A stretch of 64,000 nt of DNA from the NCBI GenBank assembly GCA_002269645.1, contig NIVC01000340.1, forward strand, positions 1 through 64,000, in the 5' to 3' direction. Of this stretch, positions 6,693 to 33,600 are shown in pieces. The notes below the pieces were generated by a model. That model was given only the letters and a program-made list of their open reading frames with translations, was not told the origin of the DNA and made no database searches. Source of the stretch: Macrostomum lignano (Eukaryota). The first letter of the stretch is position 1. Every line of letters starts with the position of its first letter. The translations under genes and the position numbers were made by a program.

Positions 6693-6804
6693 GTTGTTTT
6701 AAAATTACAGATTACGTTTTAACAAAATTGATTCGAGCACTATAAGCTTTTTAAAAAGGTTAATTTTTTGTTTATGAAAAATATATAGTTTAATAAGACA
6801 AACC

Positions 6805-6993
6805 ATGTCATCTATCTTCCAAAAACTTTTGATTCGTCTCTGTGAGTTTTTTTGCATAAAATCTGAATGTGTGCCGTTTCTGGGAAAGGAGCACAACGAG
6901 GATACTGACGGAGATTCGATCGAGGCTTCGTTCTTTTGTTGCAACTGTCAAACGACTAGCATCAATCTAACTGATGATGAAGCGAGTGCGTAA
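6805..6993 (+). CDS. Small Cys-rich ORF of unknown function overlapping the integrase start
   Basis: 62 aa with an ATG start, an amphipathic Cys-containing N-terminus and a position in a compact gene row; no recognisable motif. Confidence 0.3.
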   Translation: MSSIFQKLLIRLCEFFCIKSECVPFLGKEHNEDTDGDSIEASFFCCNCQTTSINLTDDEASA

Positions 6994-8134: not shown

Positions 8135-8175
8135 CACATGAATTGGGATTGCATGACGAAGAGAAGACTGTTGAA

Positions 8176-8634
8176 ATGGATCCTATTTTTGCTTTTTATT
8201 CTGGTCCGAATAGATCTGCTGAAGGTGGAGGTGGATATGGCATTCCTGTTTACGAAGGTTACGGTTTTTTGTCAAATTTGGCGGACAGATTGGTGTATCC
8301 TGTACTACGCAACGCAAAGAAAGATTTCTTGGATCGTGGTCTGGAGTATTTGAAAAGTGCGACAGCAAAAATTGGTATGGGTCGGAAGCGTCACTTGGAC
8401 ACAGAATCGAGCGAAGAGATGTTTAATACAACTGCAGTTTCGAGACCAAAGCGAAGGAAAAGAACCAGTGGAGTGGCTATAAGCTTAGGAAAGAAGAAAC
8501 GGCAAAAGAAACGACGAACAAGACAGTGTGGAAAGGGACGCGTGAACAAAAGAAAACGCAAGAAGACCGGTGGTATAGGAAAACGTCGAACTGCTACTGC
8601 AAGCAAGAAACTTTTTAGTCTGTTTGAAAAGTAG
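8176..8634 (+). CDS. Basic core-like protein (adenovirus pVII-like) upstream of MCP
   Basis: Gly-rich GGGGYG/EGYGF N-terminus followed by an amphipathic helix and a very Arg/Lys-rich C-terminal half; first ATG at 8176. Confidence 0.55.
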   Translation: MDPIFAFYSGPNRSAEGGGGYGIPVYEGYGFLSNLADRLVYPVLRNAKKDFLDRGLEYLKSATAKIGMGRKRHLDTESSEEMFNTTAVSRPKRRKRTSGVAISLGKKKRQKKRRTRQCGKGRVNKRKRKKTGGIGKRRTATASKKLFSLFEK

Positions 8635-8635
8635 C

Positions 8636-9958: not shown

Positions 9959-10512
9959 TTGATTCTATCCTAGATCGTGGTGTAACAGATCGCTTCCTTC
10001 GCAATGTTGTATCGAAATTGTGCGCACATTTTTTAAATGTTGTATTTCTTGGTGTTTTTCCTCAAAACTTTGTTGGTGGACTTAGACGCTTACCTTTAGA
10101 CGGTAAAGACTATTTTTTTATCGTTAATACTGACGTCTCCAACCTGCCCGGAAAACATTGGGTATGCGTTTGGGTTTATGGTCATCGAGCAGGTCGCGGT
10201 AGCAAACGACTTGGTGAATATTTTGATTCTCTTGGTCTAGTACCATTGCCAAGAATAGCAAAATGGCTAGGAAAAGAATGTGGAAATTCGAAAAATTGGT
10301 GTTATAGTCGCTTTGCTATCCAAGACCCACAGAGTGGAAGTTGTGGATTTTGGGTAATTTTTTATATTTTTCATAAGTTGACTACCAGAGGAAACCTAGA
10401 GTGTTTTATTCGAAGCGTTTTTAAACGGAATATAATTCGCACTGGTTCGTTTCGATACTTGTATGCTAAATTACGCAATTTTGTTTTACGAGTGCTGCCT
10501 CAATATTTGTAA
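9949..10512 (+). CDS. Adenain-like cysteine maturation protease
   Basis: FLGVFP, IVNTD..PGKHWV (His), EYFDSLG (Asp), QDPQSGSCG (Gln/Cys). Confidence 0.93.
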   Translation: MEVIDSILDRGVTDRFLRNVVSKLCAHFLNVVFLGVFPQNFVGGLRRLPLDGKDYFFIVNTDVSNLPGKHWVCVWVYGHRAGRGSKRLGEYFDSLGLVPLPRIAKWLGKECGNSKNWCYSRFAIQDPQSGSCGFWVIFYIFHKLTTRGNLECFIRSVFKRNIIRTGSFRYLYAKLRNFVLRVLPQYL

Positions 10513-11095: not shown

Positions 11096-11509
11096 TTCTT
11101 AGATGTGTCACCATAAACTCTGCGTCTTACTTCAAGGAGACTCGCCCAATCAGGGACCCAACGGTAGAACGGCTCTTCTCAGACCAAACTCGAAGTGAAG
11201 ATCATCAATCACGTTGGTCCCCAGACTCCCAATCTGCATCCGGTAGTTTAACTACGAGACCACTCTAATCGATGAATAAATTGGATTTGATGATGGCGGC
11301 ACGATGCAGTCTCTGATGCATCAGAAACAGGGCATTAATCGCTTGGTTACATACAGGAAGCAGCCGCGGTAGCTTTAGGCTCTGATAGGTCAATTTGTCA
11401 AGTAGAATATTCATCAGCCTCATCTTCGAGGTTGGTTAGATTCTTCTTGTACTCAAATCATTAAATACACATCAGCATCCGCCTCTCAAAGATGGTGATT
11501 CTCGAGGAT

Positions 11510-12307
11510 GCTGAAGGGTGATTCTCAAAGAGGCTGAAGGGCGATTCTCAAGGATACTGAAAGGCGATTCTCAAAGAGGCTGAAGGGCGATTCTCAAGGA
11601 AACTGAAAGGCGATTCTCAAAGAGGCTGAAGGGCGATTCTCAAGGATACTGAAGGGCGATTCTCAAAGAGGCTGAAGGGCGATTCTCAAGGATACTGAAG
11701 GGCGATTCTCAAAGAGGCTGAAGGGCGATTCTCAAAGAGGCTGAAAGGCGATTCTCGAGGATACTGAAGGGCGATTCTCAAAGAGGCTGAAGGGCGATTC
11801 TCAAGAATTTGCTGAAAGGCGATTCTTAAAGATGCTGAAGGGCGGTTATTATAAAGATGTTGAAAGGCGATTCTCAAGGATGCTGAAGGGCGATTTTCAA
11901 GGATGCTGAAGGGCGATTCTCAAGGATACTGAAGGGCGATTCTCAAAGAGGCTGAAGGGCGATTCTCAAGAATTTGCTGAAAGGCGATTCTTAAAGATGC
12001 TGAAGGGCGGTTATTATAAAGATGTTGAAAGGCGATTCTCAAGGATGCTGAAGGGCGATTTTCAAGGATGCTGAAGGGCGATTCTCAAAGAGGCTGAAGG
12101 GCGATTCTCAAGGATACTGAAGGGCGATTCTCAAAGAGGCTGAAGGGCGATTCTCAAAGACGCTGAAGGGCGATTCTCAAGGATACTGAAGGGCGATTCT
12201 CAAGGATACTGAAGGGCGATTCTCAAAGAGGCTGAAGGGCGATTCTCAAAGACGCTGAAGGGCGATTCTCAAGGATACTGAAGGGCGATTCTCAAGGATG
12301 CTGAAGG
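11510..12307. repeat. 23-bp minisatellite
   Basis: GAAGGGCGATTCTCAA followed by AGAGGCT or GGATACT, in tandem. Confidence 0.95.
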
Positions 12308-12342
12308 CCTTTTACAATGAGACTGAATTGCAATTCTCAATG

Positions 12343-12592
12343 ATAATAATATTTGATTACACCTGCTCTATTGTGCGGCGCATCTGAAGGCTGCCTACAA
12401 CTGTTCAGTCCAAGGAATGGGGGGTCGTCACACACACCCTCAATTACCCCAGCTATTAGCACCCATTTTCACAGCTGGGTGAACTGAAGCAATGCGGAGT
12501 TCTTGCTCAAGGACACAAATTGTTCCGAGTGAGTCGAGAATCGAACCCCCGACCTTTCAGTCGTGAGTCCGACACTCTAACCACAAGGCTAC
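12343..12592 (-). mobile_element. tRNA-derived SINE (MetaSINE-like central domain)
   Basis: Minus strand: A box TAGCCTTGTGGTTAGA, B box GGTTCGATTCTC, then GTGTCCTTGAGCAAG..CTTCAGTTCACCCAGCTGTGAAAATGGGT and an (ATT)n tail; no acceptor stem. Confidence 0.75.
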
Positions 12593-13443: not shown

Positions 13444-14632
13444 AATCATATATATGCTATTATATATATGCTCTATATGAGATAAAGCACGCTATTTTCC
13501 GGGCACTATTTTTAGGGCCCGAGAGCCCAAAAGGCTCACACCATGCTCTATGAGCGAACTTAAAGATAAAATTGCAAATGTACCGGTAGACGAAAAACTT
13601 TTACAGATTACCCGGTAAAAAAACATTGAATACTTTGAAAGCCATAGAAAGTAGCTAAAAACATAATAAACTCTCCAAGTACCAGCAACGCCAAGCATTG
13701 AGTACTTTAAAAGTCAATCCAAGTACAAAGTACCAGTGCTGACTTCGAAAGTTTTCAACGTTTTTCTATCGGGTAGGCGTGTCTTTGTCTAATTACATTT
13801 ATGATTTATGAAGTGTGCAGTATACTATTTGGTACTGATCGCGAGTCTCATGAATTATGTACATTTGAATTTTGAAAAATATTTTACCGTACTGTATACA
13901 ATTATTGCATTTTACTGCGTTACTTACTACATTACTACATTTTACTAAATCACTAAATTAAATTACTATACCAAGCTTATATGCACATTTTAATATATAA
14001 ATGTAAAAAAATTAGTGACCACCAATGCAATGCAGTACAGATTCCTAATTAAGGACAATTTAAACGCCTAAAATCATTAAAATATAAATGAAAAAATATA
14101 AAATTTCCATTCATATTATTATCTATATACCGTAAAACGCTACAAAAGTTATAGAACTTAAAACTTATTTAATTATATATAATATAACCTGTATGTAGGA
14201 ATTAACAAATTTAATTAGCAAATTCGTAAAGAATAGCGCATTAAGTACCACAAACGTTTCTGTTTCAAATATTACAATTACTTACTGAATAATACTAAGA
14301 CAAGTTTAAAAAAATTATAATAAATGCGCATGTAAATTAGGCAACATCTTGCAGTAAATCCGAAAAGTAGTAAGTTTAACAAAAATAAATTGCTTTTTTA
14401 TGTAGACTTTAAGTAAATATACAATCAGTTTATTATACAAACAAGAATTATATCTATTAACGACGTTTAAGTGTTTTTAAGAAACCTTCTTGCATAAATA
14501 TGCAATTAGGTGCGACTTTTAATTTCTTGTTTTTTTATCGTGTACGAAACTACGAGTAGCTATAAGAATAGAGTTTATAACTATTCATTTTTAGCAAAAG
14601 TACCAATTATCTACTGCAGAACTTCTTCGAAA

Positions 14633-15802
14633 ATGTTTTTCAGAAAGCAAAGCCTATTCTGCTTGCGGCGAAAAACGCTATTCATGTGCTGCATCGTCGT
14701 CTCTTCTTGCATAATACTTTTGATAAAAACTTTTCCATCAGACTGCTCTGGGGATTATGAATCTATCAGCGACCGCCTGGAGGAATTACAAGAGCCAGCG
14801 CAACTGAATGCACGCATTGAATCGAATTCATCGGAGTTTAATAAACAATATGCCGAACTCCTGCGGCTGCAAGACAGCTCAATGTTTTTCATTCAAAGAC
14901 GGACACGAATGCCTCTTATGCGCCTAGAGGATCAAGAACGTAACTTTAGCTACCGGGCGCAGATCGGTAGACAGTGGATGCTACGTAAGAACGTGGTTTT
15001 TGTGGCAACAGTGCAGAATGCCAGAGTACGCTTGCGGAAAAACATCGACAGCATGCACAGATTGGGAAAGCTATTCAACGACTACTGGCTGATTTTTGTC
15101 GAAAACGATTCAACCGATGGCACGCGCGAGTTGCTCCATGAAGTTCTTCAAAAAAACAACCAAACAGTGATTCTTGGGTGTCAGCCCATTAATTCAAGAG
15201 CGCCTTGCAAAATGAATATTAAATATCGGTCTGGTAAGCTTCACAGACCCGGATGGGGCCAGAAACGCACAGAGCAGGATCGTATAGATCGCGGTGTTGT
15301 AATGAGCGTTCTAAGAAACATGTACTTGGACTATATATACGACAACTTAAAGGAAACCGCGGATCTAGTCATTGTCACCGACCCGGATATTGAATGGAAA
15401 CCCTGGAGTTTAGATAATATCGCCCAGGGAATGTATTACTTTAGCGCCAAGCCGAAACTGGACATCCTGTGCGCTAATACCCGCCTCAACAACGACCTGT
15501 ATGACCCGTGCGCCCGCTCCTACTTCAGCAAGAAACGGTACACCAGCGTCACGGAATATGATCGCAGCATTATAACTGATAAAATTGCTACAGTCCAAAA
15601 CAGCATACCTGTCAAGGTTGAGTCTTGCTTCTCGGCTTTCGCCATCTATAGGGCTAGGAGTATTGCGACGAGCCGGCTGAGACACTACCCGGTGCCTGAG
15701 GAACGAAGCTGCGAGCACAACACGCTGGCAAGGCGGCTACAGGAGATCTACATTGACCCAGCCATGAAGCTGGTAATCAGGTCGCAGTTTGCTCACGCAT
15801 AG
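14633..15802 (+). CDS. Intronless type II membrane GT-A glycosyltransferase, CAP59/GT69-like
   Basis: N-terminal TM segment (LFMCCIVVSSCIILLI); IFVENDSTDGT, LRNMYLD, VTDPDI (DxD), LYDP, VESCFSAFAIY and CEH motifs. Confidence 0.75.
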   Translation: MFFRKQSLFCLRRKTLFMCCIVVSSCIILLIKTFPSDCSGDYESISDRLEELQEPAQLNARIESNSSEFNKQYAELLRLQDSSMFFIQRRTRMPLMRLEDQERNFSYRAQIGRQWMLRKNVVFVATVQNARVRLRKNIDSMHRLGKLFNDYWLIFVENDSTDGTRELLHEVLQKNNQTVILGCQPINSRAPCKMNIKYRSGKLHRPGWGQKRTEQDRIDRGVVMSVLRNMYLDYIYDNLKETADLVIVTDPDIEWKPWSLDNIAQGMYYFSAKPKLDILCANTRLNNDLYDPCARSYFSKKRYTSVTEYDRSIITDKIATVQNSIPVKVESCFSAFAIYRARSIATSRLRHYPVPEERSCEHNTLARRLQEIYIDPAMKLVIRSQFAHA

Positions 15803-16851: not shown

Positions 16852-17618
16852 TGTTGTGCCGTAGTGTACTTTCACTGCCTAGCGATCTCAGGCTTGCAGT
16901 TAATTGGCGCACTGGGACACTGCACTTTCCCTCCTCAGTTGTTTATGCACCACCCACCCCAGTCTGTCTGAGCCAGCCGGCTTTGGCTGGCTGCGCCACC
17001 CCTCTCAGCGCGTCCCCCCCCCAAGTTTTCCGTCTCTTGCGCAGCTGCTGATTGGTACGGGCCGCCTCTCTCACGCGCCGGCCAATCAGCAGCTTTCTCG
17101 CTGTAATGTGCTAAGCTGGTTGTGTGGCTGGTCGGGTGGGCGCGGGGGGTGATACCCCGCGGCCTAGCCGGCCAACCCAAATATATATTTAGCGCGGTGT
17201 AGCGGCAGTGAGGGACCAACTTTGGCTGCTACCTTCCAACCCAACTCAGCTCTGAGATTCCACTGCCCATATCGATTAGAACCGAGACGCCCCTACGGGT
17301 ACGCAACGTCTGAGAATCCGCGCTACCGGCTAGTCCTTCGCCGCCGTGTTCATTCCTCAGTAAGAACTTGAGTCTCGTTGTGTTGTTCATTGTTCGGTAC
17401 GGGACATACTGTATCGGGTACTGCCGTAGGGACGAGCTGCTGGCTAGGAACGAGAGGCGATAGTACGCACCGCCCGACACCGGCAGCTCGGTCAGTGTCG
17501 GACGCCATCACTGGCTCGCCACCCTAGAAGGGGTACTTGTACTCTGGTATTAGTCTTAGGAGGCCGTAGCTGCTCGATGATCACGAGCCGCCCCCCGGAG
17601 ATTTCGCATTACATAACA
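16852..17618 (+). repeat. 5' LTR (767 bp)
   Basis: TGTTGTG...ACATAACA; near-identical to 24419-25189; contains inverted CCAAT boxes (17043-17094) and TATATAT at 17182. Confidence 0.97.
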
Positions 17619-17619
17619 C

Positions 17620-17638
17620 TTGTGCCGTGACCAGGATT
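17620..17638 (+). promoter_or_regulatory. Primer-binding site complementary to the tRNA-His 3' end
   Basis: TTGTGCCGTGACCAGGATT versus expected TGGTGCCGTGACCAGGATT (1 mismatch), 1 nt after the LTR. Confidence 0.8.
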
Positions 17639-17788
17639 TAGGAGTTTAGTTTACTGTAACCTGGGTTGTATTTTTATTTGTCAGCAGCTTGCGCGCCTCT
17701 TAGATCTATGCACTGTTAATCTGTCACTTTCTCTATCCCGGTCAATCTCTTAGTCTTTTCTCCCTGTTAAGTTGTCTTTCGAATCCCG

Positions 17789-18747
17789 ATGGCCAACGTT
17801 GACGACCTCATCAATGCGCTTACAGCTAGAGTGCAGAATAATTTGAACGTAGGGCAAAGAGTGCCCCGACCATCCAAGTTTGTGCTGAGTCAGGATTTTG
17901 CACTGTGGATGCAGCAGTTTACAGCGTATTGTGAGGCTGCAGAGATCCCTGAAGAAGACAGGAAGCAGCACCTAATTAGCCTGATGGACTTCAATACAGC
18001 TTATCGAGCTATTGCCAATCTTGAACTGCCGGACGATCTAGAGTTTGAAGATTTTGTTGAACGCCTTTCACAACGATTCAACCAGCATCACACCCCGCAA
18101 GACAGTAAGATCGAATTGAGGAGTCAGGACCAAAAGAAGGATGAGTCAGTGGAAAGCTATGCCGACGCCCTTCGCGAAATTGTCCGCCGGGCCTATCCGA
18201 ACCTGCCGGCAGATCAGAGAGATGAGTTGGCCAGGGACCGGTTCCCTCTAGGTGCTAGAATTGCCGATAGAGTTCGTGAGCACTTGCTACTGCAGGAGCC
18301 AGAGACCCTCGACGCAACTTGTAGGTGGGTAAGACAGAGTATGGCATCCCTCCGCACAGCTCAGGCAAGCACCGACAAGCCATGGCCATCAGTGAACTCG
18401 TCTGCACTACGCAAGATGAGACAGTCAGACTCCGCGAAAAACTGAAACAGCTGAGATTGGAGCTGCAGGCCTTGAAGGCTAGGCAGGGTGCAGGAGTCAG
18501 CCATCGTGAGCACCCAAATCCCCAACCTACCCAGGCCGCAGCACCGACTCATAGAGCTGTTCAGTGTGGTCGACGCTTTGGGACCAATCACGTGACCCGT
18601 CAGTGTAGGAACCCAATAGTGTGCAGCTACTGCAGAAGGCCGAACCACGTCAAAGCCAGGTGTCAGCAGCTAGCGAGGGATCAACAGATGGGAAACGAGA
18701 GAGGGACCTGGAGGCAGGGCCATCCAGGGTCCCAAGCCAGTCACTAG
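17789..18747 (+). pseudogene. gag: Gypsy gag, one internal frameshift near 18410
   Basis: Capsid-like W..QF..YC..RF..QK..ESVESYADALRE..AYP; zinc knuckles CGRRFGTNHVTRQC and CSYCRRPNHVKARC. Confidence 0.9.
18690..18733 (+). promoter_or_regulatory. Programmed -1 ribosomal frameshift signal (gag to pol)
   Basis: Slippery heptamer G GGA AAC in the gag phase; 6-nt spacer; stem GGGACCTGGA / TCCAGGGTCCC; the -1 frame is the protease frame. Confidence 0.75.
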
Positions 18748-21700
18748 TAGAGGCCCAACCCAGCGCACCGAGCCAGCCCGCCCATGAATCCAGTACAGAA
18801 CTCGGTTTTGTTGACATCCGCTTTTCCGAGAAAGCCAAGATCACGTGTTTGCTCGACACGGGTGCCAGTACACCCCTGTTGAGTGAGAGAGTTTGGAAAA
18901 ATAATCTGCCTAGATCCATGCTAGTGCCGAGTTCCATCGGACCAAACATTTAAGTTGCTAATGGTGATGCGATTGATGTGCTGGGCGAGTGCGTTGTGGA
19001 ATTTTTTATTGGCTCTCTAAAATTCAGTCACAAATTTACAATCGTCTCCAGTCTCTTGAATCCATGCATCCTCGGAGCAGATTTATTTCGTCGTCAAGCA
19101 GCTACGCTAGATTTTGCAAACTTTCAAGTCACCACATCGAACGGTACCTTCCAATTTCGGATGACAACTGAGCGACCTATTCTCTGCCGGATTGTCATCC
19201 CGAAATCGGTAACGGTCCCCAACAATAGATCCCAAATCATTCAGGCCAAATTAAGTCGAAAAGGTGTCCGGAATTTCCAGTTCACAGGAATAACAGAGAC
19301 TCGTTATCAGAATGAAGGATTAGTGTTATTGGCCAGAGCCATTGGCATCCCATCAGCTGAAGGATTTTTGCCGATTAAAGTAACCAACATCTTAGGCGAA
19401 CCAGTGACCCTGCCCAGAGGAAGGCAAGTTGGTTGGTTCACCCCTGTAAACGATAGCCAACCTCCTGCTCAGGAAGTGAAACCTGCAGCACAGGCTAACT
19501 TGGTTACCCTTGACACCAGTTGGGACCCAGTCAGTAATCTCGGCAGCTGGGAGTCAACAGATTTGACACCAGAGCAGCAAGGTTCATTCACTGAATTGAT
19601 TCGCCGAAATCGAGACGTTTTTGCAAAAGATGACAGTGAGTTAGGCGCCACTGATTTAGCAATGCACACCATTGACACCGGCTCAGCGAAGCCGACCCGC
19701 GAGCCCCGCGGCGCATCCCACTTCATCTGCGCCCGGAGATCGACAAGGAGATTGATAGTAGGACTCTAAATGACGTCACCGTTCCTGATCCTTTCCCTCC
19801 ACTTAGGATGGACGAGACGCTTGAAGCTCTATCAGGAAACGCTGTATTCTCCACTCTGGACCTAGCGTCAGGCTACCATCAGTGCCCCCTGGACCGTAGA
19901 GACCAGTTGAAGACAGCGTTTGTCATCCCAAACCGCGGTCAGTTCGCGTGGCGCTATGTTAGTTTTGGGCTGAAAAATGCCCCAGCCACATTTGTAAAGC
20001 TCATGAACCTAGTTATGACTGGCCTGTCATGGAAGGAGTGCCTTGTGTACTTTGATGACATTATAGTTTTTGCGAAGTCCTATGAAGAGCATTTTAAGAG
20101 ACTGCAGCACGTGTTCGACCGGTTCGACCGATTGCGAGCTGCAGGAATCCGTCTGAAAGCAAAGAAGTGCCATTTTCTGTCCAAAGAGGCAAAGTTTTTA
20201 GACCACGTAGTTTCAGCGGAAGGAATAGCTACAGATCCAGCGAAAACGAAAGAGATTAGCGATTGGCCTATTCCGAGTTGTGTCAAAGAGCTACAATCAT
20301 TCCTTGGTCTCTGTTCTTATTACAGAAATTTCATCCGTGATTTCTCGATCATAGCAGCTCCGCTGTACAAACTCCTGCGCCAGAACACCAAGTTCGAGTG
20401 GGGCCGGGAGCAGCAAGGAGCATTCTGTGAATTAAAGAGACTTCTGATTTCGACTGGAGTGATGGCTTACCCAGATTTTTCCGAAACAGCTGGACAGTAT
20501 GTGCTTGACACCGACGCGAGTTCCAAAATAGGAATTGGAGCTGTCCTGTCTCAGGTGCAAGCCGACGGCTCCGAAAAAGTGAGATTGTCTATGGGTCAAG
20601 GACCCTGACAGAGTGTGAAAAGAACTACTGTACGACTAGACTAGAACTTCTTGCGATCGTGCACTTCGTCAAGGCCTACAAATATTACCTCTTGGGGCGC
20701 AAATTTAAAATCCGAACAGATCACAGTGCGTTGTCATGGTTAACGAACCTCAAAGATGTGGAAGGACAGTGCGCTCGATGGCTAGAGACGCTACAGCGTT
20801 TTGAGTTTGAAATAGTTCACAGGAAAGGGATTTTTCACCAGAATGCGGACAGTGTCTCGTAAAGTTCGAAAGCATTGGGCCCAAGAGTCGTGCCCTTCCT
20901 GTAACAGTTCGCCACAAACACCTGAACAAGTGAACGCTGTGTTAGCATCACCTCTCAGCGTCAAGTGCATCAGAGAGGCTCAGAGAATTGACCCAGCTCT
21001 GAAACGAGTAAGGCAGTTACTTGAAGGTGAAGCGCTGCAAAATGAACCGATCAGTAGTTTAGTTGAGAGAGAGAGATCTGGGCCCATAGGACTCGAATAG
21101 TCTTAGAAGATGGGCTACTGCTCCTGACAGTGCCAGAGAACTCACAGAAGAGAATCCTCCTACCAAATTCCCTGTTAGAAGAAGCCGCCAAAATCCTTCA
21201 TGATGGCGTCAGTGGATGCCACCTCGGAGTTAAGAAGACTCAAGGAAAGTTTAAGCAACGCTTTTTGTGGCCTGGTCTGTCTCGTAGAGTTGAGGAGTGC
21301 TGCCGAACATGTCTAGTGTGCTCAAAGTGCAAACCATCGCCAAGAGGCAGGGCACCACTGCAACCCATCCCGAGCTCATTTCCGTTTCAAAGAATCATGT
21401 GCGACATCATTGGTCCTTTGCCGAAGTCCAAGCATGGGTCGAGATTTGTTTTGACAATCCAAGACGCATTCAGTAAATGGCCGTGTGCAATCCCGTTAGC
21501 AAATCAGCGTGCCAAAACAGTAGCCCGTGCAATCTTCACGCACTGGATTTCATCATTCGGTTGTCCACAGGAGATAGTCACTGATCAGGGATCAAATTTT
21601 GAGTCAGCATTGATGAAGAACCTTTGTTCTCTGCTAGACATCCGCAAGTGTCGAACCACTCCGTATCATCCGATGGCGGATGGGCAAGCAGAAAGCTTTA

Positions 21701-22325
21701 ATAGGACTCTAAAGCACATGTTAACGTGTCAGTTAGAGCAGGAGGACAAGGATTGGGAAGACTGCATTGCGCCCGGTTTGCTAGCCTATCGTTCTAGCGT
21801 GCATAGAGGCACAGGCTAGCACTACATTCTGTTTGGTAGGGAAATGCAGCTCCGATCGACATTGAGAATCCGACTGAGAGGGTGCCAGAGAGTTTCTCCA
21901 AGTTCACTCGTCGACTGACTGAAGACCTTCAGCAAGCACACGAGGCTGTGAGGGAGAATCTCAGAACCTATCAGAGGAAGCAAAAGAAGCTTTATGACAG
22001 CCAAGCTCGTGGCGCTCAGATCAATGAAGGTGATCTTGTTCTAGAATACGATCCCGTGATTAAACCGAATGAAATCCCGAAGTTCCACCGCTATTGGAAA
22101 GGCCCGGCCAAAGTCCTAAAAAAGTTTTCCGATGTCAATTACAGAATCCTGCACGATGGTGCGCGAAGGCCTAGGGTAGTCCATTTCAACAACCTAAGGA
22201 AAATCGATGCCAGCTCTAGGTCCCACGTTCCTGCTCAAAGGAGGACTCAGGCAACGGCGGGAACCAGGTCACGTGAGCGATATTCCCGCCCGGAAGCTCC
22301 TAATCCCCCAATGCCAGTTTTTTGA
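18697..22325 (+). pseudogene. pol: Gypsy pol (protease, RT, RNase H, integrase) with stops, frameshifts and an internal RT deletion
   Basis: LLDTGAS and ILGADLF (PR); FSTLDLASGY and YFDD (RT); LDTDAS and IRTDHSAL (RH); HHCC, DIIGP, TDQGSNF, AESFNRTLK and WKGP (IN). About 35 codons are missing between EIDKEID and LNDVT. Confidence 0.95.
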
Positions 22326-22618
22326 ATCTGAGCAGAACAGTGACGCTGAATTGGACCCAGAGCCCATTTGGGCACAGCGCATCACACACCATCAGCCTCG
22401 TGTAGCCGCTCCTCCCGAGCAGGATTTCAATTGTCGCCCTGTTCGTGCGAATCGAGGAATTCCGCCACGTCGATTCGGAGACCCAATCCTCTATTAATCT
22501 GAGCCAATCTGTCCATCAATCGCTCTGGGATGTGCATTTTCTCACCCTTCTCATCGCGCCTCCAAGTTGCTGAGTACAGTACGGGTTCGTATTTTCATCC
22601 AGTTGTAATTGTATTTTC

Positions 22619-22876
22619 ATGCGTTTAGCAAGTTCCATTTTTTGGGGTGCCTGCAAGTTGAACGCTGGCCTTGCAGTGTCGGATCTGCACGACCTGCTCG
22701 GCGTAGCTCAATCAGCTTCACCGAGAGACATAAAGGTGGCCTTCCGTCGGCGCTCACTACTACTTCGCCCCGACAAGGTGGGCGTCGGAAGCACAGGGGC
22801 CTACCAACGGGTGGTATTCGCGTATTCAGTCCTGAGCGACCCGTTTTATAGAGCGCTATACGACAAATTCGGTTAA
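22619..22876 (+). pseudogene. DnaJ J-domain in the env position of the Gypsy element
   Basis: DLHDLLGVAQSAS..DIK.AFRR.SL..RPDK..AYSVLSDP..RALYDKFG; HPD reads RPD (CGC vs CAC); TAA stop where Glu (GAA) is expected. Confidence 0.85.
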
Positions 22877-23572
22877 GCAGCCCTGAGCAACACGCTATCG
22901 TACGCGCAGTTCTTCAGCCCGCCACCCGGAGTCAGTTTTCCGGACGAAATAAGAGCCGGACTCGAGAGCATGGGGATCGTGGTCATCAGTGACGATGAAG
23001 ACGAACCTCCCGCCGTTGATGCGACCCCAATTGCGCCGGCGGGTGGAGTCTTAATGGTCGCGCGATCAGGCCCACCAAGAGTCCCTGAGTCGATTGAGGT
23101 CAGATACAGAAGCCTCCGGAATCACCTGGCCCAGCATCTGCGGATCGGTCGGATCGCTCAGGCGCAGGAATGCATATCAGGACTGGAAGAACTGTTCCTT
23201 TTGGCAGGCCTGGAATCTCGGCGATGGGTCTCCGATTCTCTAGGGGTTGCGCTGAGTTTCATAGCGTCTGATGTGTCACCTCGAAAGCGCCGCCCAGGGT
23301 CATCTAGGCGGGGCCTTCGAGTGCTGTCGAACGAAGCGCTGACTGCATCAATCGGATTTGTAATGACATGCATCAAGAAAATGAGCCTGCTGAACGGCGG
23401 GGCACTCCTGTCAAAACTCCGAGAGCTAACGGTACTAGTGGCCCCGGACTCGAAGTCCAAAGACCAGGCAGAGAAGGCCGTCGATGAAGCGGATTTCCTC
23501 GACCCAGAATGCCCTCAAGAAGACCTAGATGCCCTAGTTGCCCCAGTTGTCCTGGACGGCGTAGTCGCGTAG
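22877..23572 (+). CDS. Middle segment of the Gypsy accessory ORF (SIM, helical region, NLS, start of TatD-like fold)
   Basis: Open and in frame with the J-domain across one stop; IVVISDDEDE, SPRKRRP, FLDPECP. Confidence 0.55.
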   Translation, partial: AALSNTLSYAQFFSPPPGVSFPDEIRAGLESMGIVVISDDEDEPPAVDATPIAPAGGVLMVARSGPPRVPESIEVRYRSLRNHLAQHLRIGRIAQAQECISGLEELFLLAGLESRRWVSDSLGVALSFIASDVSPRKRRPGSSRRGLRVLSNEALTASIGFVMTCIKKMSLLNGGALLSKLRELTVLVAPDSKSKDQAEKAVDEADFLDPECPQEDLDALVAPVVLDGVVA

Positions 23573-23611
23573 AAGCCTGTGTGTCGGTAGTGAATTCACC
23601 GTTCTATTTGA

Positions 23612-24268
23612 GACCGTCAAACCCCGCAACTGCCCGGCTCATGTGACTCTCGGATCCACTTTGCGCTCGGATTGAGGGCGTCAGCGGCACCGCTCATGAC
23701 CACGCTGGCTGCCGACCTGCAGCGTTTCATAGCGGGCGAATGGACAAGGGTAGTGGCTGTCGGTGAAGCCGAGTTGGACGTCCAGAATACTGCAATCAGT
23801 GTGGAGCAACAAATGGCAGCCCTGGAGCTACAGGTTGGGCTAGCAAATAAACGAGATCTACCCCTCCTGGTTCGTTTGCGAGAGCGTAGACGTAGCCCAG
23901 TCGAACCCGGTGGCTCGGCCTGGCACCAGTTCTTACGGTTGCTAGTGTCGTCGGACTTTGCAAACTGTCGCATTCTAGTTGTCGAATCTTCCGACTGGCC
24001 CAAAGACACCCTCAGCCTGTACCTAGCGTCGTTGCCAAGACTGATATTTGAAGTCACCGCCCGGGTCTCCAACAGCCGATGGCATGCCCGATGCGTCGCA
24101 GCGATACCGTCCGACCGGCTGCTAGTCGCATCATCAGCACCATTCGCGGGAAACCCGGGCAAGCCGACTGATGTCCGGAAGGCGGCGACCTGGCTTACTG
24201 AGGAGCGAAGCGACGGGGCTCTACCTGGTCGACTGGCTGCGGCTGCGCGTGAATTTTATAATATTTAA
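23612..24268 (+). CDS. TatD-like (TATDN2-type) TIM-barrel domain with degenerate metal ligands
   Basis: IHFALGLRA, RVVAVGEAELD, QQMAALELQVGLA...LPLLVRLRE, VAAIPSDRLLVASSAPF and AREFYNI map in order and spacing onto TatD GxHP, VAIGEIGLD, Q..F..QL.LA...LP..IH.RE, IP.DRLL.ETDAPY and N...LY. Confidence 0.8.
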   Translation, partial: DRQTPQLPGSCDSRIHFALGLRASAAPLMTTLAADLQRFIAGEWTRVVAVGEAELDVQNTAISVEQQMAALELQVGLANKRDLPLLVRLRERRRSPVEPGGSAWHQFLRLLVSSDFANCRILVVESSDWPKDTLSLYLASLPRLIFEVTARVSNSRWHARCVAAIPSDRLLVASSAPFAGNPGKPTDVRKAATWLTEERSDGALPGRLAAAAREFYNI

Positions 24269-24404
24269 CTGTGTGCAAAATGCCAGCAGACAAATACAAA
24301 TGCTCGTCTCGCCATTGCACTGTCCTTGCACTATTAATCTTTTGTATGGTTCGTCTATGGTACTTTATAGTAATTTTTTTTTCATTTTTGTTTCCTTCTC
24401 TTTT

Positions 24405-24418
24405 GGGAGGGGGGAGGG
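24405..24418 (+). promoter_or_regulatory. Polypurine tract
   Basis: GGGAGGGGGGAGGG immediately before the TG of the 3' LTR. Confidence 0.9.
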
Positions 24419-25189
24419 TGTTGTGCCGTAGTGTAATTTCACTGCCTAGCGATCTCAGGCTTGCAGTTAATTGGCGCACTGGGACACTGCACTTTCCCTC
24501 CTCAGTTGTTTATGCACCACCCACCCCAGTCTGTCTGAGCCAGCCGGCTTTGGCTGGCTGCGCCACCCCTCTCAGCGCGTCCCCCCCCAAGTTTTCCGTC
24601 TCTTGCGCAGCTGCTGATTGGTACGGGCCGCCTCTCTCACGCGCCGGCCAATCAGCAGCTTTCTCGCTGTAATGTGCTAAGCTGGTTGTGTGGCTGGTCG
24701 GGTGGGCGCGGGGGGCGATTCCCCGCGGCCTAGCCGGCCAACCCAAATATATATTTAGCGCGGTGTAGCGGCAGTGAGGGACCAACTTTGGCTGCTACCT
24801 TCCAACCCAACTCAGCTCTGAGATTCCACTGCCCATATCGATTAGAACCGAGACGCCCCTACGGGTACGCAACGTCTGAGAATCCGCGCTACCGGCTAGT
24901 CCTAATTCGCCGCCGTGTTCATTCCTCAGTAAGAACTTGAGTCTCGTTGTGTTGTTCATTGTTCAGTACGAGACATACTGTATCGGGTACTGCCGTAGGG
25001 ACGAGCTGCTGGCTAGGAACGAGAGGCGATGGTACGCACCGCCCGACACCGGCAGCTCGGTCAGAGTGTCGGACGCCATCACTGGCTCGCCACCCTGAAG
25101 GGGTACTTGTACCCTGGTATTTAGTCTTAGGAGGCCGTAGCTGCTCGAGGATCACGAGCCGCCCCCCGGAGATTTTGCATTACACAACA
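24419..25189 (+). repeat. 3' LTR (771 bp)
   Basis: TGTTGTG...CACAACA perfect 7-bp terminal inverted repeat; differs from the 5' LTR by roughly 15-20 small changes counted by eye. Confidence 0.97.
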
Positions 25190-25244: not shown

Positions 25245-26150
25245 TGTACATGTAGCTACCCCCGGGAAGTATTTATCTAGTTGTCCTTGGTACATGTAGC
25301 TACCCCAGGGACACTTTATCCAGTTGACCTTGGGTACACGTAGCTACCCCAGGGACACTTTATCTAGTTGATCTTGGTACACGTAGCTACCCTAGGGACA
25401 CTATCCAGTTGACCTTGGTACACGAAGCTACCCTAGGGACACTATATAGTTGACCTTGGTACATGTAGCTACCCTAGGGACACTTTATCTAGTTGTCCTT
25501 GGTTCATATAGCTACCCCCGGGACACTTTATCCAGTTGACCTTGGTACATGTAGCTACCCCACGGACCCTTTATCCAGTTGACCTTGGTACATGTAGCTA
25601 CCCCAGGGACACTTTATCTAGTTGTTCTGTACATGTAGCTACCCCAGGGACACTTTATCCAGTTGACCTTGGGTACACGTAGCTACCCCAGGGACACTTT
25701 ATCTAGTTGATCTTGGTACACGTAGCTACCCCCGGGACACTTTATCTAGTTGACCTTGGTTCATATAGCTACCCCCGGGACACTTTATCTAGTTGACCTT
25801 GGTTCATATAGCTACCCCAGGGACACTTTATCTAGTTGACCTTGGTACATATAGCTACCCAGGGACACTTTATCTAGTTGTCCTTGGTACACGTAGCTAC
25901 ACTAGGGACATTTTATCCAGTTGTCCTTGGTACACGTAGCTACCCCAGGGACACTTTATCCAGTTGTCCTTGGTACACGTAGCTACCCCAGGGACACTTT
26001 ATCTAGTTGACCTTGGTTCATATAGCTACCCCCGGGAAGTATTTATCTAGTTTTCCTTAGTACACGTAGCTACCCTAGGGACACTTTATCCAGTCGTCCT
26101 TGGTACACGTAGCTACCCCAGGGACACTTATAGATATACTAGTTGGCCTT
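25245..26150. repeat. 43-bp minisatellite
   Basis: GTAGCTACCCCAGGGACACTTTATCTAGTTGACCTTGGTACAC in tandem. Confidence 0.95.
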
Positions 26151-26417
26151 GGTAATTCCAGATGACGAAGTCTTGACAGATCGCCATACATTTTGATTCT
26201 ACTAATTTTTTAAGTTTTAATTGTGGGTGAGGAGAGGGGATGTTATCTAGGCAAATCAAAAGGCACCCGGCACAGCTGACTTCAATGTTCTATACTCATC
26301 TGATAGTAAAGTCGTAGAAATTATATATTTTCTATAGTTTAACCTATATTTACAGACGCTACATTTCTGTTTCGACAGATCTCTCTGATCTACTCTTGTA
26401 GCTACATGCGACTGACA

Positions 26418-26716: not shown

Positions 26717-27674
26717 TCATTGGATTTCAGTCACCTGTAAATTTGAATGTATTTTAGACTATGAATTACCAATTTGAGCAAAGGAGTGACGTTCCTAGAT
26801 CAGTGGGATGAGTGGGAAAAAAACAGGAGAGGGGAAGGAGAGAACAGGGAGAGTGAGAGGGGGACGGAGAGTGAGAAGATAGAGGGAGAGAGAAGGATAA
26901 GAGAGGGAGAGGGAGTGAGAGGGAAAGTGAGAGGAGAGGAAGAGGGGAGTGAGAGGAGAGAAAGAGGAGAGGGAGAAGAGAGGAAGAGGAGAGGGAGAGT
27001 GAGATGGAGAGTGAGAGGAGAGGAAGAGGGAGTGAGAGGGAGAGTGAAAGGAGAGTGAGAGGAGAGGGAGAGGGAGTGAGGGGGGTGAGGAGAGGGAGAG
27101 GGAGAGTGAGAGAGAGGAGAGTGAGAGTGAGAGGAGAGGCAGAGGAGAGGAATGTGAGAGTGAGAGAGGGAAAGTGGGAGGTGACACAAAGAGAACAGCA
27201 GAAAGAGGTGAAGTAGTCCCCGGATTTCCGAGACGTGGACAGTGACACGGTGGGAGGGGGAGACTTGAGTGCCACCAACAGACACAGGAAAGCGAGATGC
27301 AGGCAGCGTGAATGCCATAAATAAGTGAGCACCTCAACGCTCAGCTCCATCGCCCGCAGCATCTGACTGGTGACAGGATCAACTTCCAGCTGTTCGGCGT
27401 CGAGAGCGGACACCTCGGGCACGTAGTTGTCCCGCCGTTCGCGCTCCTCCTCCTGCAGACGAATGGAGATGCCGCGCACCGGGCCGCGCTGGATTCGCTT
27501 CATCAGGTGGGTGAGGAAGCCGGCAATTTTGTTGCGCAACGCCTTGGACGGGATGATTGCGACCTCTTCGCAGACGCGCTTGTTGATGTGGAAATCGTTG
27601 CCCAGCCTGGTGTAGTACTTCTCGATGATCACCCGGGCGGCCTTCTTCACAGTTTTGGTGCGGACTCGACCCAT
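26717..27674 (-). CDS. RPS17: 40S ribosomal protein S17 (eS17), 119 aa; exons 27674-27333 and 26734-26717
   Basis: [46 protein letters not shown]; phase-0 intron GT..TTTACAG adds VTEIQ-stop. The exon-1 donor (GAG|GTGCTC) is weak. Confidence 0.93.
26815..27190. repeat. GA-rich low-complexity tract in the RPS17 intron
   Basis: Almost pure G/A; generates spurious ORFs. Confidence 0.9.
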
Positions 27675-30661: not shown

Positions 30662-33600
30662 TTAAACCGCCGGCTTCAACAGCGAATTGATCGACTCCAG
30701 TTGCTCTCGCAGACGCTGCATCAGCTCAGCCGGAGGCGGCGGCATGGGCGGCCCATCTTCCAGCCGGCGAGCCAGCAGGCCGGTAAGCATCAGCCTGGCC
30801 GACAGCAGACTCTGCGGGCAGTCTTCGGCAAAATCCAAATACCTCTGAGCAATATCGGCCGCCCTATTGAGCACCCTGTCTCGATTGTCGGCTGAGGACT
30901 TGAACCAATCTGACTGTTGAGTGTCGCAGCGGTGGCACTTCTGCAGCGTCTGCAGGATGCGGCCTTTTAACTCCGCGTTCAGACTGGCCTTGCCTGATGA
31001 TGATGGGGTGGATCAACCTGACTCTCACATCTCACCCACTAGCTACCTGACTCTCACCTCACTCATTCACTAGCTACCTGACTCTCACTTCACTCATTCA
31101 CTAGCTACCTGACTCTCACTTCACTCATTCACTAGCTACCTGACTCTCACCTCACATCTCATTCACTAGCTACCTGACTCTCACCTCACATCTCATTCAC
31201 TAGCTACCTGACTCTCACCTCACATCTCATTCACTAGCTACCTGACTCTCACCTCACATCTCATTCACTAGCTACTTGACTCTCACTCTATCAGCTACCT
31301 GACTCACTCTATCAGCTACCTGACTCTCACCTCACATCTCATTCACTAGCTACCTGACTCTCACCTCACATCTCATTCACTAGCTACCTGACTCTCACCT
31401 CACATCTCATTCACTAGCTACCTGACTCTCACCTCACATCTCATTCACTAGCTACCTGACTCTCACCTCACATCTCATTCACTAGCTACTTGACTCTCAC
31501 TCTATCAGCTACCTGACTTTCACTCTACTACCTGACTCTCACTCTATCAGCTACCTGACTCTCACTCTATCCGCTACCTGACTCTCACCTCTTCATATCT
31601 CATTCACTAGCTACCTGACTCTCACTCTATCAGCTACCTGACTCTCACTCTATCCGCTACCTAACTCTCTCCTCACATCTCATTCACTAGCTACCTGACT
31701 TTCACTCTATCAGCTACCTGACTCTCAGCTCACATATCATTCACTAGCTACCTGACTCTCACTCTATCAGCAACCTGACTCTCACTGTATCAGCAACCTG
31801 ACTCTCACTCTATCAGCAACCTGACTCTCACTCTATCAGCAACCTGACTCTCACTCTATCAGCAACCTGACTCTCACTCGATGAGCAACCTGACTCTCAC
31901 TCGATGAGCAACCTGACTCTCACTTTATCAGCTACCTGACTCTCACTCTATCAGCTACCTGACTCTCACTTTATCAGCTACCTGACTCTCACTCTATCAG
32001 CTACCTGACTCTCACTCTATCAGCTACCTGACTCTCACTCTATCAGCTACCTGACTCTCACTCTATCAGCTACCTGACTCTCACTCTATCAGCTACCTGA
32101 CTCTCACATGTCAAAGTAGTCTCACCCCCAGTCACTCACCTGTCTCTCCCTCTTCAGTCAGACTCAGCAGCTTAGCGTACAGCCACCAGAACTCTGCATC
32201 GCCGCTGGACTGCGCAGCCACCCGAGCAAACAGAGTCAACAGGCGCCTGCGCAGGTCTTCCCTTGCAGCGGAATCCTCAATCAGTTCCTCATCAGAAGAA
32301 GCTGCCCGAATGAGCACCCCGGCAGAGTGAGGATCCCAATATTTGGGCCGCAGTTCCAATAATCGATGATAAGCTCGCATGGCCTCATTAAACTGACCAG
32401 TATCGGCGCATACAGCCAGATAATTATCCCAGACGCGCCATTGTTCCCAATTAGATTTGAGCGCTTCGCGGAGCGCCGAACAGGCGCCAATTTTATTGCC
32501 CCGACGAACCATAGCGGTGCCCAAATTGGTCCAGGCCTCGTAGTTGTCCGGTTCCAGTTGAGCGGAGCGGCGGAATGCAAGCTCGGCTTTTTCAATTTCG
32601 CCAGCTTGCAAACAGCAGCAGCCGTAGGTGAACCAGGCCTTCGGCTGCAGGTGATTGGCGGCTAGTGCCAGCTCGAACTGGCGCATAGCTTCGGCGTATT
32701 GCCCGGCTACCATGGCAACGTAGCCTAGGGAACGAGCGGCACGAGCGCATCGACCGTTGGATAGGCGCCAGGCAGTGTGCAGGTGGTTCCAGTCTCTGAC
32801 AGTGGGAGTGGCATGGGGGTGAGTAACAATTTCTCTATGGAACCTCTGGATCGGAAATGGCACCTAATATATCGGAACTGGCACCCTGTCCCTTATAGAT
32901 CGGAAATGGCACCCTAATGAATCGGAAGACATCTAATAGAACGGAAATGGCATCTAATAAATCGAAAATGGCATCTAATAAATCGAAAATGGCATCTAAT
33001 AAATCGAAAATGGCACCCTAAAAGATCGGAATGGCACCCTAATAGATCGGAATGGCACCCTAAAAGATTGGTAATGGCACCCTAAAAGATCGGAAATGGC
33101 ACCCTAATAGATCGGAAATGGCACCCTAATAGATCGGAAATGGAACCCTAATAGATCGGAAATGGCACCCTAATCGATCGGAAATGGCACCCTAACAGAT
33201 AGGAAATGGCACCTTAATAGATCGGAAATGGCACCTAATAGATCAGAATCGGCATCCTAATATAATGGATCGGAAATGACACCTAAAAGATCGGAAATGG
33301 CACCAAATAGATTGGAAATGGCACCTAATAGATTGGGAACACTGTAATGTCAGATTCTTGACGCTGGACACTATCCTTGATCCTGCAGCGGTCATACCGT
33401 TCTCAAAAAACGTCTCTCTCACCTTGTAACCTCGGCAAGCGCGCAGTACAGCTCGGGCGTCTCAGACTCAGCCAATCGATCTCTAATAATCTTCTCCGCT
33501 AAAGCGGGCTTGTCCAATTTCTGATAGCAGGCAATAATTTGAGAATAGCTATCCCAGCGCAGATAGATATCCAAGGCTGAGCTCACGGCTCCAACGGCTG

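What the first reader, a model, noticed from the sequence alone, without database searches (positions are those of the whole stretch)
22619..24268. Ty3/Gypsy element carries a J-domain-SIM-pseudoTatD fusion gene in the env position
Seen in sequence: three ORFs between the integrase and the PPT are all in the same frame. The J-domain ORF joins the next across a single TAA (one change from GAA). The TatD-like part joins through two compensating shifts, at about 23563 and at 23644 (ATGTGAC, consistent with loss of one TG from ATGTGTGAC). The shifted stretch reads VEACVSVVNSP, like the EGC..VFCDP strand of TATDN2-type proteins. Reconstruction gives one protein of about 550 aa: J-domain, acidic SIM, helical region with NLS, and a full TatD barrel. 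Established: J-domains recruit Hsp70; TatD proteins are metal-dependent nucleases; env-position ORFs in Gypsy elements are usually fusogens or unknown proteins. Inference: this is a captured, re-engineered accessory protein, possibly a nuclear counter-defence or capsid/cDNA chaperone factor. I do not know this architecture from any retrotransposon but cannot exclude prior reports of TE-linked TatD genes.
Basis: partly seen in the sequence, partly recalled or inferred. Interest (0 to 1): 0.92.

Follow-up and report, generated by a model that had tools for sequence, protein, structure and literature searches.

The report
Dead J-like/TatD-like gene in Gypsy retrotransposon
A decayed Ty3/Gypsy retrotransposon carries, where an envelope gene would sit, one broken gene for a soluble protein built from a degenerate J-like domain and a catalytically dead TatD-nuclease fold; its only detectable relatives are intact proteins of the flatworm Macrostomum lignano, so it is a previously undescribed kind of retrotransposon accessory gene rather than an artefact.

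Summary
Window 16852-25189 is an 8.3-kb Ty3/Gypsy LTR retrotransposon with LTRs 97.7% identical. Between the end of pol and the polypurine tract lies one gene, 22619-24268. It has a J-domain match (Pfam 5e-12), a variable helical middle and a TatD-fold domain (Pfam 1.6e-7; hhalign 98.7%; Foldseek top 13 hits are TatD proteins).

In this copy the gene is broken three times: one stop and two compensating frameshifts. That is the same break density as gag-pol, which has at least ten breaks. All pieces, including the out-of-frame stretch, are collinear with uninterrupted proteins of Macrostomum lignano (35-39% identity). These were the only specific relatives among 1.8 billion representative proteins.

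Both lineages lack the J-domain HPD histidine and nearly all TatD metal ligands. The protein is therefore a pseudo-enzyme and a J-like protein, not a nuclease or a proven Hsp70 activator. It has no transmembrane segment, so it is not an envelope protein. The proposed SIM and NLS lie in the unconserved middle.

I found no sibling copies and could not see the genomic context of the M. lignano genes. Whether this is an established element gene or a one-off capture stays open. No report of TatD or DnaJ genes in LTR retrotransposons was found. Verdict: new variant of a known kind (non-env ORF3); moderate interest.

The parts
16852..17618 (+). 5' LTR (TG...CA, 767 bp)
   Evidence: 97.7% identical to the 3' LTR over 776 aligned columns, with 5 small indels. 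Ends read directly.
17789..22497 (+). gag-pol (capsid/PNMA-like gag, CCHC knuckle, protease DTG motif, RT, RNase H, integrase with H2C2 zinc domain, rve core and p58 C-terminal domain). Broken: at least 8 frameshifts and at least 2 in-frame stops.
   Evidence: Pfam: PNMA/Retrotrans_gag, RVT_1 1.8e-24, RT_RNaseH 3.4e-11, Integrase_H2C2 1.3e-15, rve 2.1e-12, Integrase_p58_C 6.1e-10. Minimum-path break count. One of the shifts could be a natural gag/pol frameshift; this was not resolved.
22619..24268 (+). Accessory gene (ORF3) in the env position: J-like domain, conserved post-J motif, variable helical middle, TatD-like pseudo-enzyme domain. Broken: 1 in-frame stop and 2 frameshifts (net zero).
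   Evidence: Collinear with intact M. lignano proteins P0038 and P0039.
22682..22864 (+). J-like domain (Pfam DnaJ, profile positions 1-63 of 63); the HPD histidine is replaced by arginine
   Evidence: Pfam 5.1e-12. Best solved relative is the DNAJB12 J-domain, 1.7e-11, with the HPD of the known domains aligned to RPD.
22901..22954 (+). Short aromatic/proline-rich motif directly after the J-like domain, conserved with M. lignano
   Evidence: Alignment A3 and the tblastn HSP that runs through it.
22970..23470 (+). Variable, mostly helical middle region (holds the acidic 'SIM'-like and basic 'NLS'-like strings)
   Evidence: No significant similarity to P0038. No Pfam hit. Single-sequence AlphaFold2 model is helical but of low confidence (pLDDT 57).
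23473..24265 (+). TatD-like TIM-barrel domain (approximate 5' bound inferred by collinearity with M. lignano); metal ligands lost except one glutamate
   Evidence: Pfam TatD_DNase on 23711-24166. hhalign of the module against canonical TatD: 98.7%, E 3.4e-16, from strand 1 to the C-terminus. AlphaFold2 pLDDT 79.9, and the Foldseek top 13 PDB hits are all TatD family, TM up to 0.82. Residue comparison.
24405..24418 (+). Polypurine tract abutting the 3' LTR
   Evidence: Read directly from the sequence.
24419..25189 (+). 3' LTR (771 bp)

Best explanation
The 22619-24268 gene is the third gene (a non-envelope ORF3) of a Ty3/Gypsy retrotransposon lineage. It encodes a soluble protein of about 550 residues. 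The protein has an N-terminal J-like domain without an intact HPD motif, a fast-evolving helical linker and a C-terminal TatD-fold barrel that has lost its metal-binding and catalytic residues. Shown: the gene architecture, its position and strand inside the element, the homology of both domains, the loss of catalytic residues in two lineages that are only 35-39% identical, and the absence of membrane segments. Inferred: the protein acts as a binder or adaptor and not as an enzyme. The dead TatD barrel may keep the family's nucleic-acid-binding groove. TatD proteins act on single-stranded DNA and RNA, and TATDN2 acts on the RNA of RNA-DNA hybrids. The barrel could therefore hold or shield the element's RNA or cDNA intermediates. 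The J-like domain would provide a protein-protein contact, possibly to the Hsp70/J-protein system without stimulating the ATPase. Also inferred: it would be expressed from a spliced subgenomic RNA, as ORF3s usually are. The copy in this window is a dead insertion. gag-pol and ORF3 have decayed at the same rate since insertion, so nothing is functional here now.
For: Position: same strand, 121 nt after the pol stop, own ATG, and it ends 136 nt before the PPT. There are no flanking repeats or poly(A) that would mark a nested insertion or a retrocopy. Break density is 3 in 1.65 kb, against at least 10 in 4.7 kb of gag-pol (1.8 vs 2.1 per kb). The LTRs themselves differ by 5 indels in about 770 bp, so all genes may have been open at insertion. 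Domain homology. Conservation as one unit: intact M. lignano proteins P0038 and P0039 carry the same J-like, motif, linker and TatD-like order. Those two copies are 97.5% identical to each other, and a third gene model (P0042) shares the same start, each with unrelated sequence upstream. Not an ordinary conserved host gene: an exhaustive phmmer search of 1.84 billion representatives gave only these two M. lignano proteins and two ordinary TatD proteins. Shared loss of TatD ligands and of the HPD histidine in both lineages shows that the non-catalytic state is old and was kept in an open reading frame. No hydrophobic segment reaches transmembrane level (maximum Kyte-Doolittle 19-residue mean 1.37). 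Precedent for enzyme-derived non-env ORF3s shared between retroelement classes: PMC5408684.
Against: Only one copy, and a decayed one, was seen. No sibling copy was found in the window or in any searchable collection. The genomic context of the M. lignano genes could not be retrieved, so no second example of the gene inside a Gypsy element exists. The M. lignano gene models show no Gypsy domains, and the multiple copies there could be homeologues of a polyploid genome. ORF3 is richer in G+C (57%) than gag-pol (50%), which is compatible with a recent foreign origin. Four distant Gypsy relatives (IN 37-44% identical) carry no such gene; only three of these loci hold sequence downstream of the integrase, because L003 ends at it. 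Nucleic-acid binding, the chaperone contact and splicing are all untested.
Confidence: 0.5

Rival explanations
1. One-off or lineage-limited capture. A host gene of a rare J-like/TatD-like family was copied into the 3' part of one Gypsy lineage, for example by template switching during reverse transcription. It rides along with no role for the element, and the M. lignano proteins are the host-gene relatives.
For: G+C of ORF3 is 57%, against 50% for gag-pol. The M. lignano gene models have no Gypsy domains. No other Gypsy element with this gene was found. Gene capture by LTR retrotransposons is well known (PMC5408686, listed; title and abstract only, not read).
Against: No poly(A) remnant, no intron remnants and no repeat-flanked insert borders. 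The gene is no more decayed than gag-pol. A host gene would be expected in other annotated animal proteomes, but only M. lignano has it. There it occurs in at least three gene models that share sequence only from two codons before the ATG and sit among transposon-derived sequence.
Confidence: 0.3
2. The J-like/TatD-like unit is itself a mobile or shared module that associates with different retroelement classes, as GDSL and DEDDy ORFs do in bdelloid rotifers. It joined this Gypsy element secondarily.
For: In M. lignano gene model P0039 the module begins about 60 residues after the end of a non-LTR-type RNase H and zinc-knuckle ORF, and a transposase-like sequence follows it (my reading of the sequence; no Pfam hit). 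Three M. lignano models have different upstream sequence right up to the module's start. Precedent: PMC5408684.
Against: P0039 is a 3511-residue chimeric gene prediction, so adjacency in it proves little. No terminal repeats or target duplications surround the module in the window. No DNA context is available.
Confidence: 0.12
3. Chance: unrelated ORFs in G+C-rich spacer DNA that happen to resemble J and TatD domains.
For: The region is G+C-rich and also carries a spurious 181-codon antisense ORF.
Against: Both Pfam hits exceed curated cut-offs. There are collinear matches to an intact homologue across all pieces with E down to about 1e-23 and an hhalign probability of 98.7%.
Confidence: 0.01

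Closest known systems
Non-envelope ORF3s of bdelloid-rotifer LTR retrotransposons (GDSL esterase/lipase, DEDDy exonuclease; Rodriguez, Kenefick and Arkhipova 2017, PMC5408684)
   Same: An extra gene downstream of pol in Ty3/Gypsy-like elements. It derives from a cellular enzyme family that includes a nucleic-acid hydrolase, is not an envelope protein, and may be shared with other retroelement classes.
   Different: The folds differ (TatD TIM barrel and J-like domain). The rotifer ORFs keep their catalytic residues, whereas here nearly all are replaced. The rotifer ORFs were documented in many intact, transcribed copies; here there is one dead copy.
TatD-family metal-dependent nucleases (PF01026: E. 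coli TatD/YcfH/YjjV, human TATDN1/2/3)
   Same: Sequence and predicted fold.
   Different: Of the conserved metal-ligand and catalytic positions (both His of the HxH pair, His-Pro, Glu, His, His, Glu-x-Asp), only the Glu of the GE motif is kept. This holds in both the window and M. lignano. The domain is fused to an N-terminal J-like domain and sits inside a retrotransposon. No specific link to TATDN2 was found.
J-domain proteins (PF00226); nearest solved relative is the DNAJB12 J-domain (2ctp)
   Same: Full-length match to the 63-position J-domain profile, four-helix pattern, conserved C-terminal helix.
   Different: The HPD histidine is arginine in the window. The M. lignano domain scores only 16.8 bits and has no histidine in that loop. 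By established knowledge the HPD is needed to stimulate Hsp70 ATPase, so this is a J-like domain.
Errantivirus and other Ty3/Gypsy envelope genes (F-type and HSV gB-type; PMC13524379)
   Same: Same slot between integrase and 3' LTR as in GAG-POL-ENV elements.
   Different: No transmembrane segment or signal-like hydrophobic core. There is no similarity to fusion glycoproteins. According to that paper, flatworm errantiviruses carry gB-type env in GAG-ENV-POL order.
Macrostomum lignano uncharacterised proteins A0A1I8I457, A0A1I8I0H8, A0A1I8HEH7 (auto-named 'J domain-containing protein' and 'ribonuclease H')
   Same: The same domain order, 35-39% identity in both conserved domains, and the same missing catalytic residues. 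These are the only true family members found.
   Different: They are uninterrupted, their genomic context is unknown, and they are embedded in long, probably chimeric gene predictions.

Membership tests
Ty3/Gypsy (Metaviridae) LTR retrotransposon | Pair of long terminal repeats with TG...CA ends | tested here: met
   16852-17618 and 24419-25189, 97.7% identical.
Ty3/Gypsy (Metaviridae) LTR retrotransposon | Domain order gag, PR, RT, RNase H, IN (integrase after RT) | tested here: met
   Pfam hits in that order. The protease is seen only as a DTG motif in the translation.
Ty3/Gypsy (Metaviridae) LTR retrotransposon | Polypurine tract before the 3' LTR, primer-binding site after the 5' LTR, target-site duplication | tested here: inconclusive
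   The PPT is clear. A PBS candidate follows the 5' LTR but was not compared with a tRNA, because none is in the window. The 4-bp flanks match at 3 of 4 positions.
J-domain (PF00226) | Significant full-length match to the J-domain profile | tested here: met
   E 5.1e-12, 46.2 bits against a cut-off of 27.8. 58 PDB J-domains with E up to 0.01.
J-domain (PF00226) | Intact His-Pro-Asp motif between helices II and III | tested here: not met
   The window has Arg-Pro-Asp aligned to the HPD of DNAJB12, SIS1 and DNAJB1. The M. lignano homologue has no His there.
TatD_DNase (PF01026) | Sequence and fold of the TatD TIM barrel | tested here: met
   Pfam 1.6e-7, above the cut-off. hhalign 98.7%. Foldseek top 13 hits are TatD proteins. 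The model used a TatD alignment, so the fold result is not independent.
TatD_DNase (PF01026) | Conserved metal-binding and catalytic His/Glu/Asp residues | tested here: not met
   Only the GE glutamate is kept. The other invariant positions of 13 canonical TatD proteins are replaced in both the window and M. lignano.
TATDN2-type TatD | Closer to TATDN2 than to other TatD clades | not tested
   No TATDN2 sequence or structure appeared among the hits. No tree was made.
Retroelement envelope (env) protein | Signal peptide, transmembrane anchor, fusion-protein fold | tested here: not met
   Maximum 19-residue Kyte-Doolittle hydropathy is 1.37. The domains are cytosolic-type.
Established accessory ORF3 of an LTR-retrotransposon family | Present at the same position in several copies or families, with open frames in some | not testable with these tools
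   No eukaryotic genome collection could be searched. Protein and contig searches found no sibling.

The most novel reading that the evidence does not exclude
The J-like/dead-TatD protein is an old, selectively maintained retroelement accessory factor of flatworms, shared between LTR and non-LTR retroelements. It is a pseudo-nuclease that binds but does not cut the replication intermediates (RNA, cDNA or RNA-DNA hybrid), coupled to a J-like handle that ties it to the host chaperone system. That would make it a new class of retrotransposon-encoded protection or counter-defence protein.
Probability: 0.2. Interest if true: 0.75.

Novelty: new variant of a known kind. Interest (0 to 1): 0.55.

Why it matters
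Extra genes of LTR retrotransposons show what such elements need beyond gag and pol. So far they are mostly envelope genes, with a few enzymes. A conserved pseudo-nuclease fused to a J-like domain would add a non-enzymatic type that may bind nucleic acid or chaperones. It would also define a protein family that automatic annotation currently labels only as 'J domain-containing'. If the same module also accompanies non-LTR elements in Macrostomum, it would be a second animal example of gene sharing between retroelement classes. The copy in this window is dead, so its value is as a pointer to the family.

Tried and rejected
(1) Word-indexed protein search with the TatD piece found nothing. With the integrase it found no sibling; the best hits were 61% identity over 61% of the query and 48% over 90%. 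With a profile of the module it found only one more M. lignano fragment plus ordinary bacterial TatD proteins.

(3) Exact-product look-ups for P0038, P0042 and a host ORF of the window found no contig. The M. lignano context and the source organism therefore stay unknown.

(4) Metagenome and IMG/VR scans with the window piece and the M. lignano module found no relative.

(5) Four loci with distant Gypsy integrases, including one from the flatworm Heterobilharzia, contain no J/TatD module.

(6) The middle region has no Pfam hit, no similarity to the homologue and only a low-confidence helical model. I rejected the SIM and NLS as established features.

(7) A nested-insertion signature around ORF3 was not found.

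(8) No heat-shock elements occur in the LTRs, unlike some M. lignano LTR elements (PMC12801592).

(9) Rfam and tRNA scans of the window were empty.

(10) The alignment tools print a majority line by themselves. These lines were not used, copied or saved.
Full report
**The element**

Window 16852-25189 is an LTR retrotransposon. Its LTRs are 767 and 771 bp long, have TG...CA ends and are 97.7% identical, with five small indels between them. A polypurine tract at 24405-24418 abuts the 3' LTR.

The internal region gives Pfam hits in the order gag (PNMA/Retrotrans_gag), zinc knuckle, RT (1.8e-24), RNase H, then integrase with its H2C2, rve and p58 C-terminal domains. A protease DTG motif is visible in the translation. 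This is the Ty3/Gypsy order.

gag-pol (17789-22497) is not open. The cheapest path through it needs at least 8 frameshifts and 2 stops. One of these shifts could be a natural gag/pol frameshift.

The element is about 50-58% G+C, in flanks of 39%. No second copy lies in the window.

**The observation**

Three ORFs in the same frame lie between the pol stop and the PPT.
- The first piece matches Pfam DnaJ over the whole 63-position profile (5.1e-12, 46 bits).
- The third piece matches TatD_DNase (1.6e-7, 31.4 bits).

Both scores are above the curated cut-offs. The span needs one stop and two frameshifts that cancel each other.

**Outside evidence that it is one gene**

The word-indexed search with the TatD piece found nothing. 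An exhaustive phmmer search of 1.84 billion representative proteins found four proteins. Two are ordinary TatD hydrolases. The other two are long proteins, P0038 (1229 aa) and P0039 (3511 aa), matched at 3e-16 and 4e-14.

Both long proteins are from the free-living flatworm Macrostomum lignano, UniRef A0A1I8I457 and A0A1I8I0H8. A third gene model, P0042 (A0A1I8HEH7), holds the N-terminal part of the module.

P0038 and P0039 contain an uninterrupted module of about 437-440 residues with the same order as the window gene:
- a degenerate J-like domain;
- a short aromatic/proline-rich motif;
- a linker;
- a TatD-like domain.

tblastn of the module against the window gives two collinear matches in the frame of the three ORFs. 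One runs from the J-like domain through the stop into the second piece (38-39% over 94-101 aa, E about 1e-13 to 1e-15). The other covers the third piece (37-38% over 178-190 aa, E about 1e-20 to 1e-23).

The 25-codon stretch that is open only in another frame matches P0038 residues 563-577, just upstream of the TatD match (E 0.001 for that single comparison). At the aligned positions the homologue reads straight through. Hence the three pieces are one gene, broken three times in this copy.

**The TatD-like domain**

A profile of the M. lignano domain plus the window piece aligns to 13 canonical TatD proteins with 98.7% probability (E 3.4e-16). The alignment runs from the first strand to the C-terminal helix. 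The intact family member therefore has a complete barrel.

In the window, the first strands of the barrel fall in the end of the second piece and in the shifted stretch. This is my reading of collinearity, and it is not significant on its own.

An AlphaFold2 model of the third piece has pLDDT 79.9 and pTM 0.80. Its 13 best PDB matches are TatD proteins: P. putida 3rcm, E. coli YcfH and YjjV, the S. aureus DNase, human TATDN1 and TATDN3 and others, with TM-scores up to 0.82. The model was built on a TatD alignment, so this result is not independent of the sequence evidence.

The conserved metal ligands of TatD proteins are mostly gone. The His-Pro, the two barrel histidines and the Glu-x-Asp are replaced in both the window and M. 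lignano. The HxH pair is replaced in M. lignano. Only the glutamate of the GE motif is kept. Because the two lineages share only 35-39% identity, this loss is old and did not arise by decay in this copy. The domain is a pseudo-enzyme.

**The J-like domain**

The window domain aligns end to end with the J-domains of DNAJB12, SIS1 and DNAJB1. It has arginine where these have the histidine of HPD. The M. lignano domain reaches only 16.8 bits and has no histidine in that loop. By established knowledge the HPD motif is required to stimulate Hsp70. Recruitment of Hsp70 therefore cannot be assumed.

**The middle region**

The roughly 170 residues between the conserved motif and the barrel show no Pfam hit, no similarity to M. 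lignano and only a low-confidence helical model. The acidic SIM-like string and the basic NLS-like string lie in this region, so they are not conserved features.

**Not an envelope protein**

No 19-residue window exceeds a Kyte-Doolittle mean of 1.37. Both domains are of cytosolic type.

**Element gene or passenger?**

In favour of an element gene:
- The placement and orientation are exact, and the gene has its own ATG.
- There is no poly(A), no repeat or nesting signature.
- The break density equals that of gag-pol: 1.8 against 2.1 per kb. With the LTR indel rate, this fits all genes having been open at insertion.
- The family is absent from every other annotated proteome searched.
- It is present in M. 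lignano in at least three gene models, full-length in two and as an N-terminal fragment in the third, that share sequence only from two codons before the start. One of them follows a non-LTR-type RNase H ORF.

Against:
- There is only one copy here, and it is dead.
- No sibling was found anywhere.
- The M. lignano context is unavailable, and no Gypsy domains occur in those models.
- M. lignano polyploidy could explain the duplicates.
- ORF3 has higher G+C than gag-pol.
- Four loci with distantly related integrases carry no such module.

I put an established ORF3 at about 0.5, a one-off capture at about 0.3 and a module shared among retroelement classes at about 0.12.

**Mechanism**

What is shown is a soluble two-domain protein without the residues needed for TatD catalysis or canonical J-domain action, conserved as a unit. 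What follows is inference. It would act as an adaptor whose dead barrel keeps the family's affinity for single-stranded nucleic acid or RNA-DNA hybrids. TatD proteins are 3'-5' exonucleases, and human TATDN2 cuts the RNA of R-loops (PMC10711561). The J-like domain would mediate a protein contact. Such a protein could shield or escort reverse-transcription intermediates. It would most likely be made from a spliced subgenomic RNA, as ORF3s generally are (PMC5408684). None of this was testable here.

**Comparison with what is known**

Non-envelope ORF3s derived from cellular enzymes are known in bdelloid-rotifer LTR retrotransposons. Examples are GDSL esterase and DEDDy exonuclease, and these are also shared with Penelope-like elements. 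Additional ORFs are also reviewed for plants.

According to PMC13524379, flatworm errantiviruses carry gB-type env in gag-env-pol order. A survey of 137 M. lignano LTR families does not mention such a gene (PMC12801592).

Full-text searches combining TatD, DnaJ or J domain with LTR retrotransposons found no report. I therefore rate this as a new variant of a known kind: a new ORF3 type and an undescribed protein family.

**Source organism**

The source organism is not established. The RPS17 exon is typically metazoan (my own knowledge of the family). The only homologues of ORF3 are from a flatworm.

**Verdict**

Interest is moderate (0.55), limited by the single dead copy and by the unknown context of the intact relatives.

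Noticed in passing
window 700-10500 (+): A run of same-strand ORFs that looks like part of a Maverick/Polinton-type element, not a retrotransposon. It includes an integrase core plus chromodomain (6974-8134), a dUTPase (2664-3233, 1.8e-29) and a parvovirus-type phospholipase A2-like domain (3325-3768, 3.4e-9). There are weak P-loop ATPase (3765-4460) and adenoviral-protease (9949-10512, E 0.038) hits, plus several unassigned ORFs. No protein-primed polymerase was seen in the window. A TBP-like hit (732-1160, 2.3e-7) sits at its left edge.
   Followed up: partly
window 25246-26200: An array of about 22 copies of a 43-bp tandem repeat begins about 55 bp after the 3' LTR.
   Followed up: no
window 11369-12445: Two blocks of 23-bp tandem repeats, each about 0.5 kb.
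   Followed up: no
window 37136-38193: A tandem repeat of about 240-300 bp. Each of its five units carries a perfect heat-shock-element-like motif (5 matches against 1 expected). The LTRs of the Gypsy element have none.
   Followed up: no
window 46693-50667: A 1324-codon ORF with several overlapping long ORFs, in a strongly C-rich stretch (GC skew down to -0.6). It has no credible Pfam hit and is probably low-complexity repeat DNA rather than a gene.
   Followed up: no
window 14510-15802 (+), 26766-27674 (-), 32132-32863 (-): Host-type genes flank the element: a single-exon CAP59-like mannosyltransferase ORF (2.8e-6, just under the Pfam cut-off), the first exon of ribosomal protein S17e followed by a CT-rich microsatellite, and a TPR-repeat protein.
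   Followed up: partly
window 22619-24268 and P0038/P0039: In the window copy, the histidine of the J-domain HPD and two of the TatD histidines are all replaced by arginine. M. lignano has arginine or lysine at the two TatD positions and no histidine in the HPD loop. Whether this reflects a shared constraint or a mutational bias was not examined.
   Followed up: no
P0039 (M. lignano A0A1I8I0H8), residues about 1600-2430 and 2870-3511: This 3511-residue gene model strings together two non-LTR-type RNase H regions, the J-like/TatD-like module and a transposase-like tail. It is almost certainly a chimeric prediction across a transposon-rich region.
   Followed up: partly
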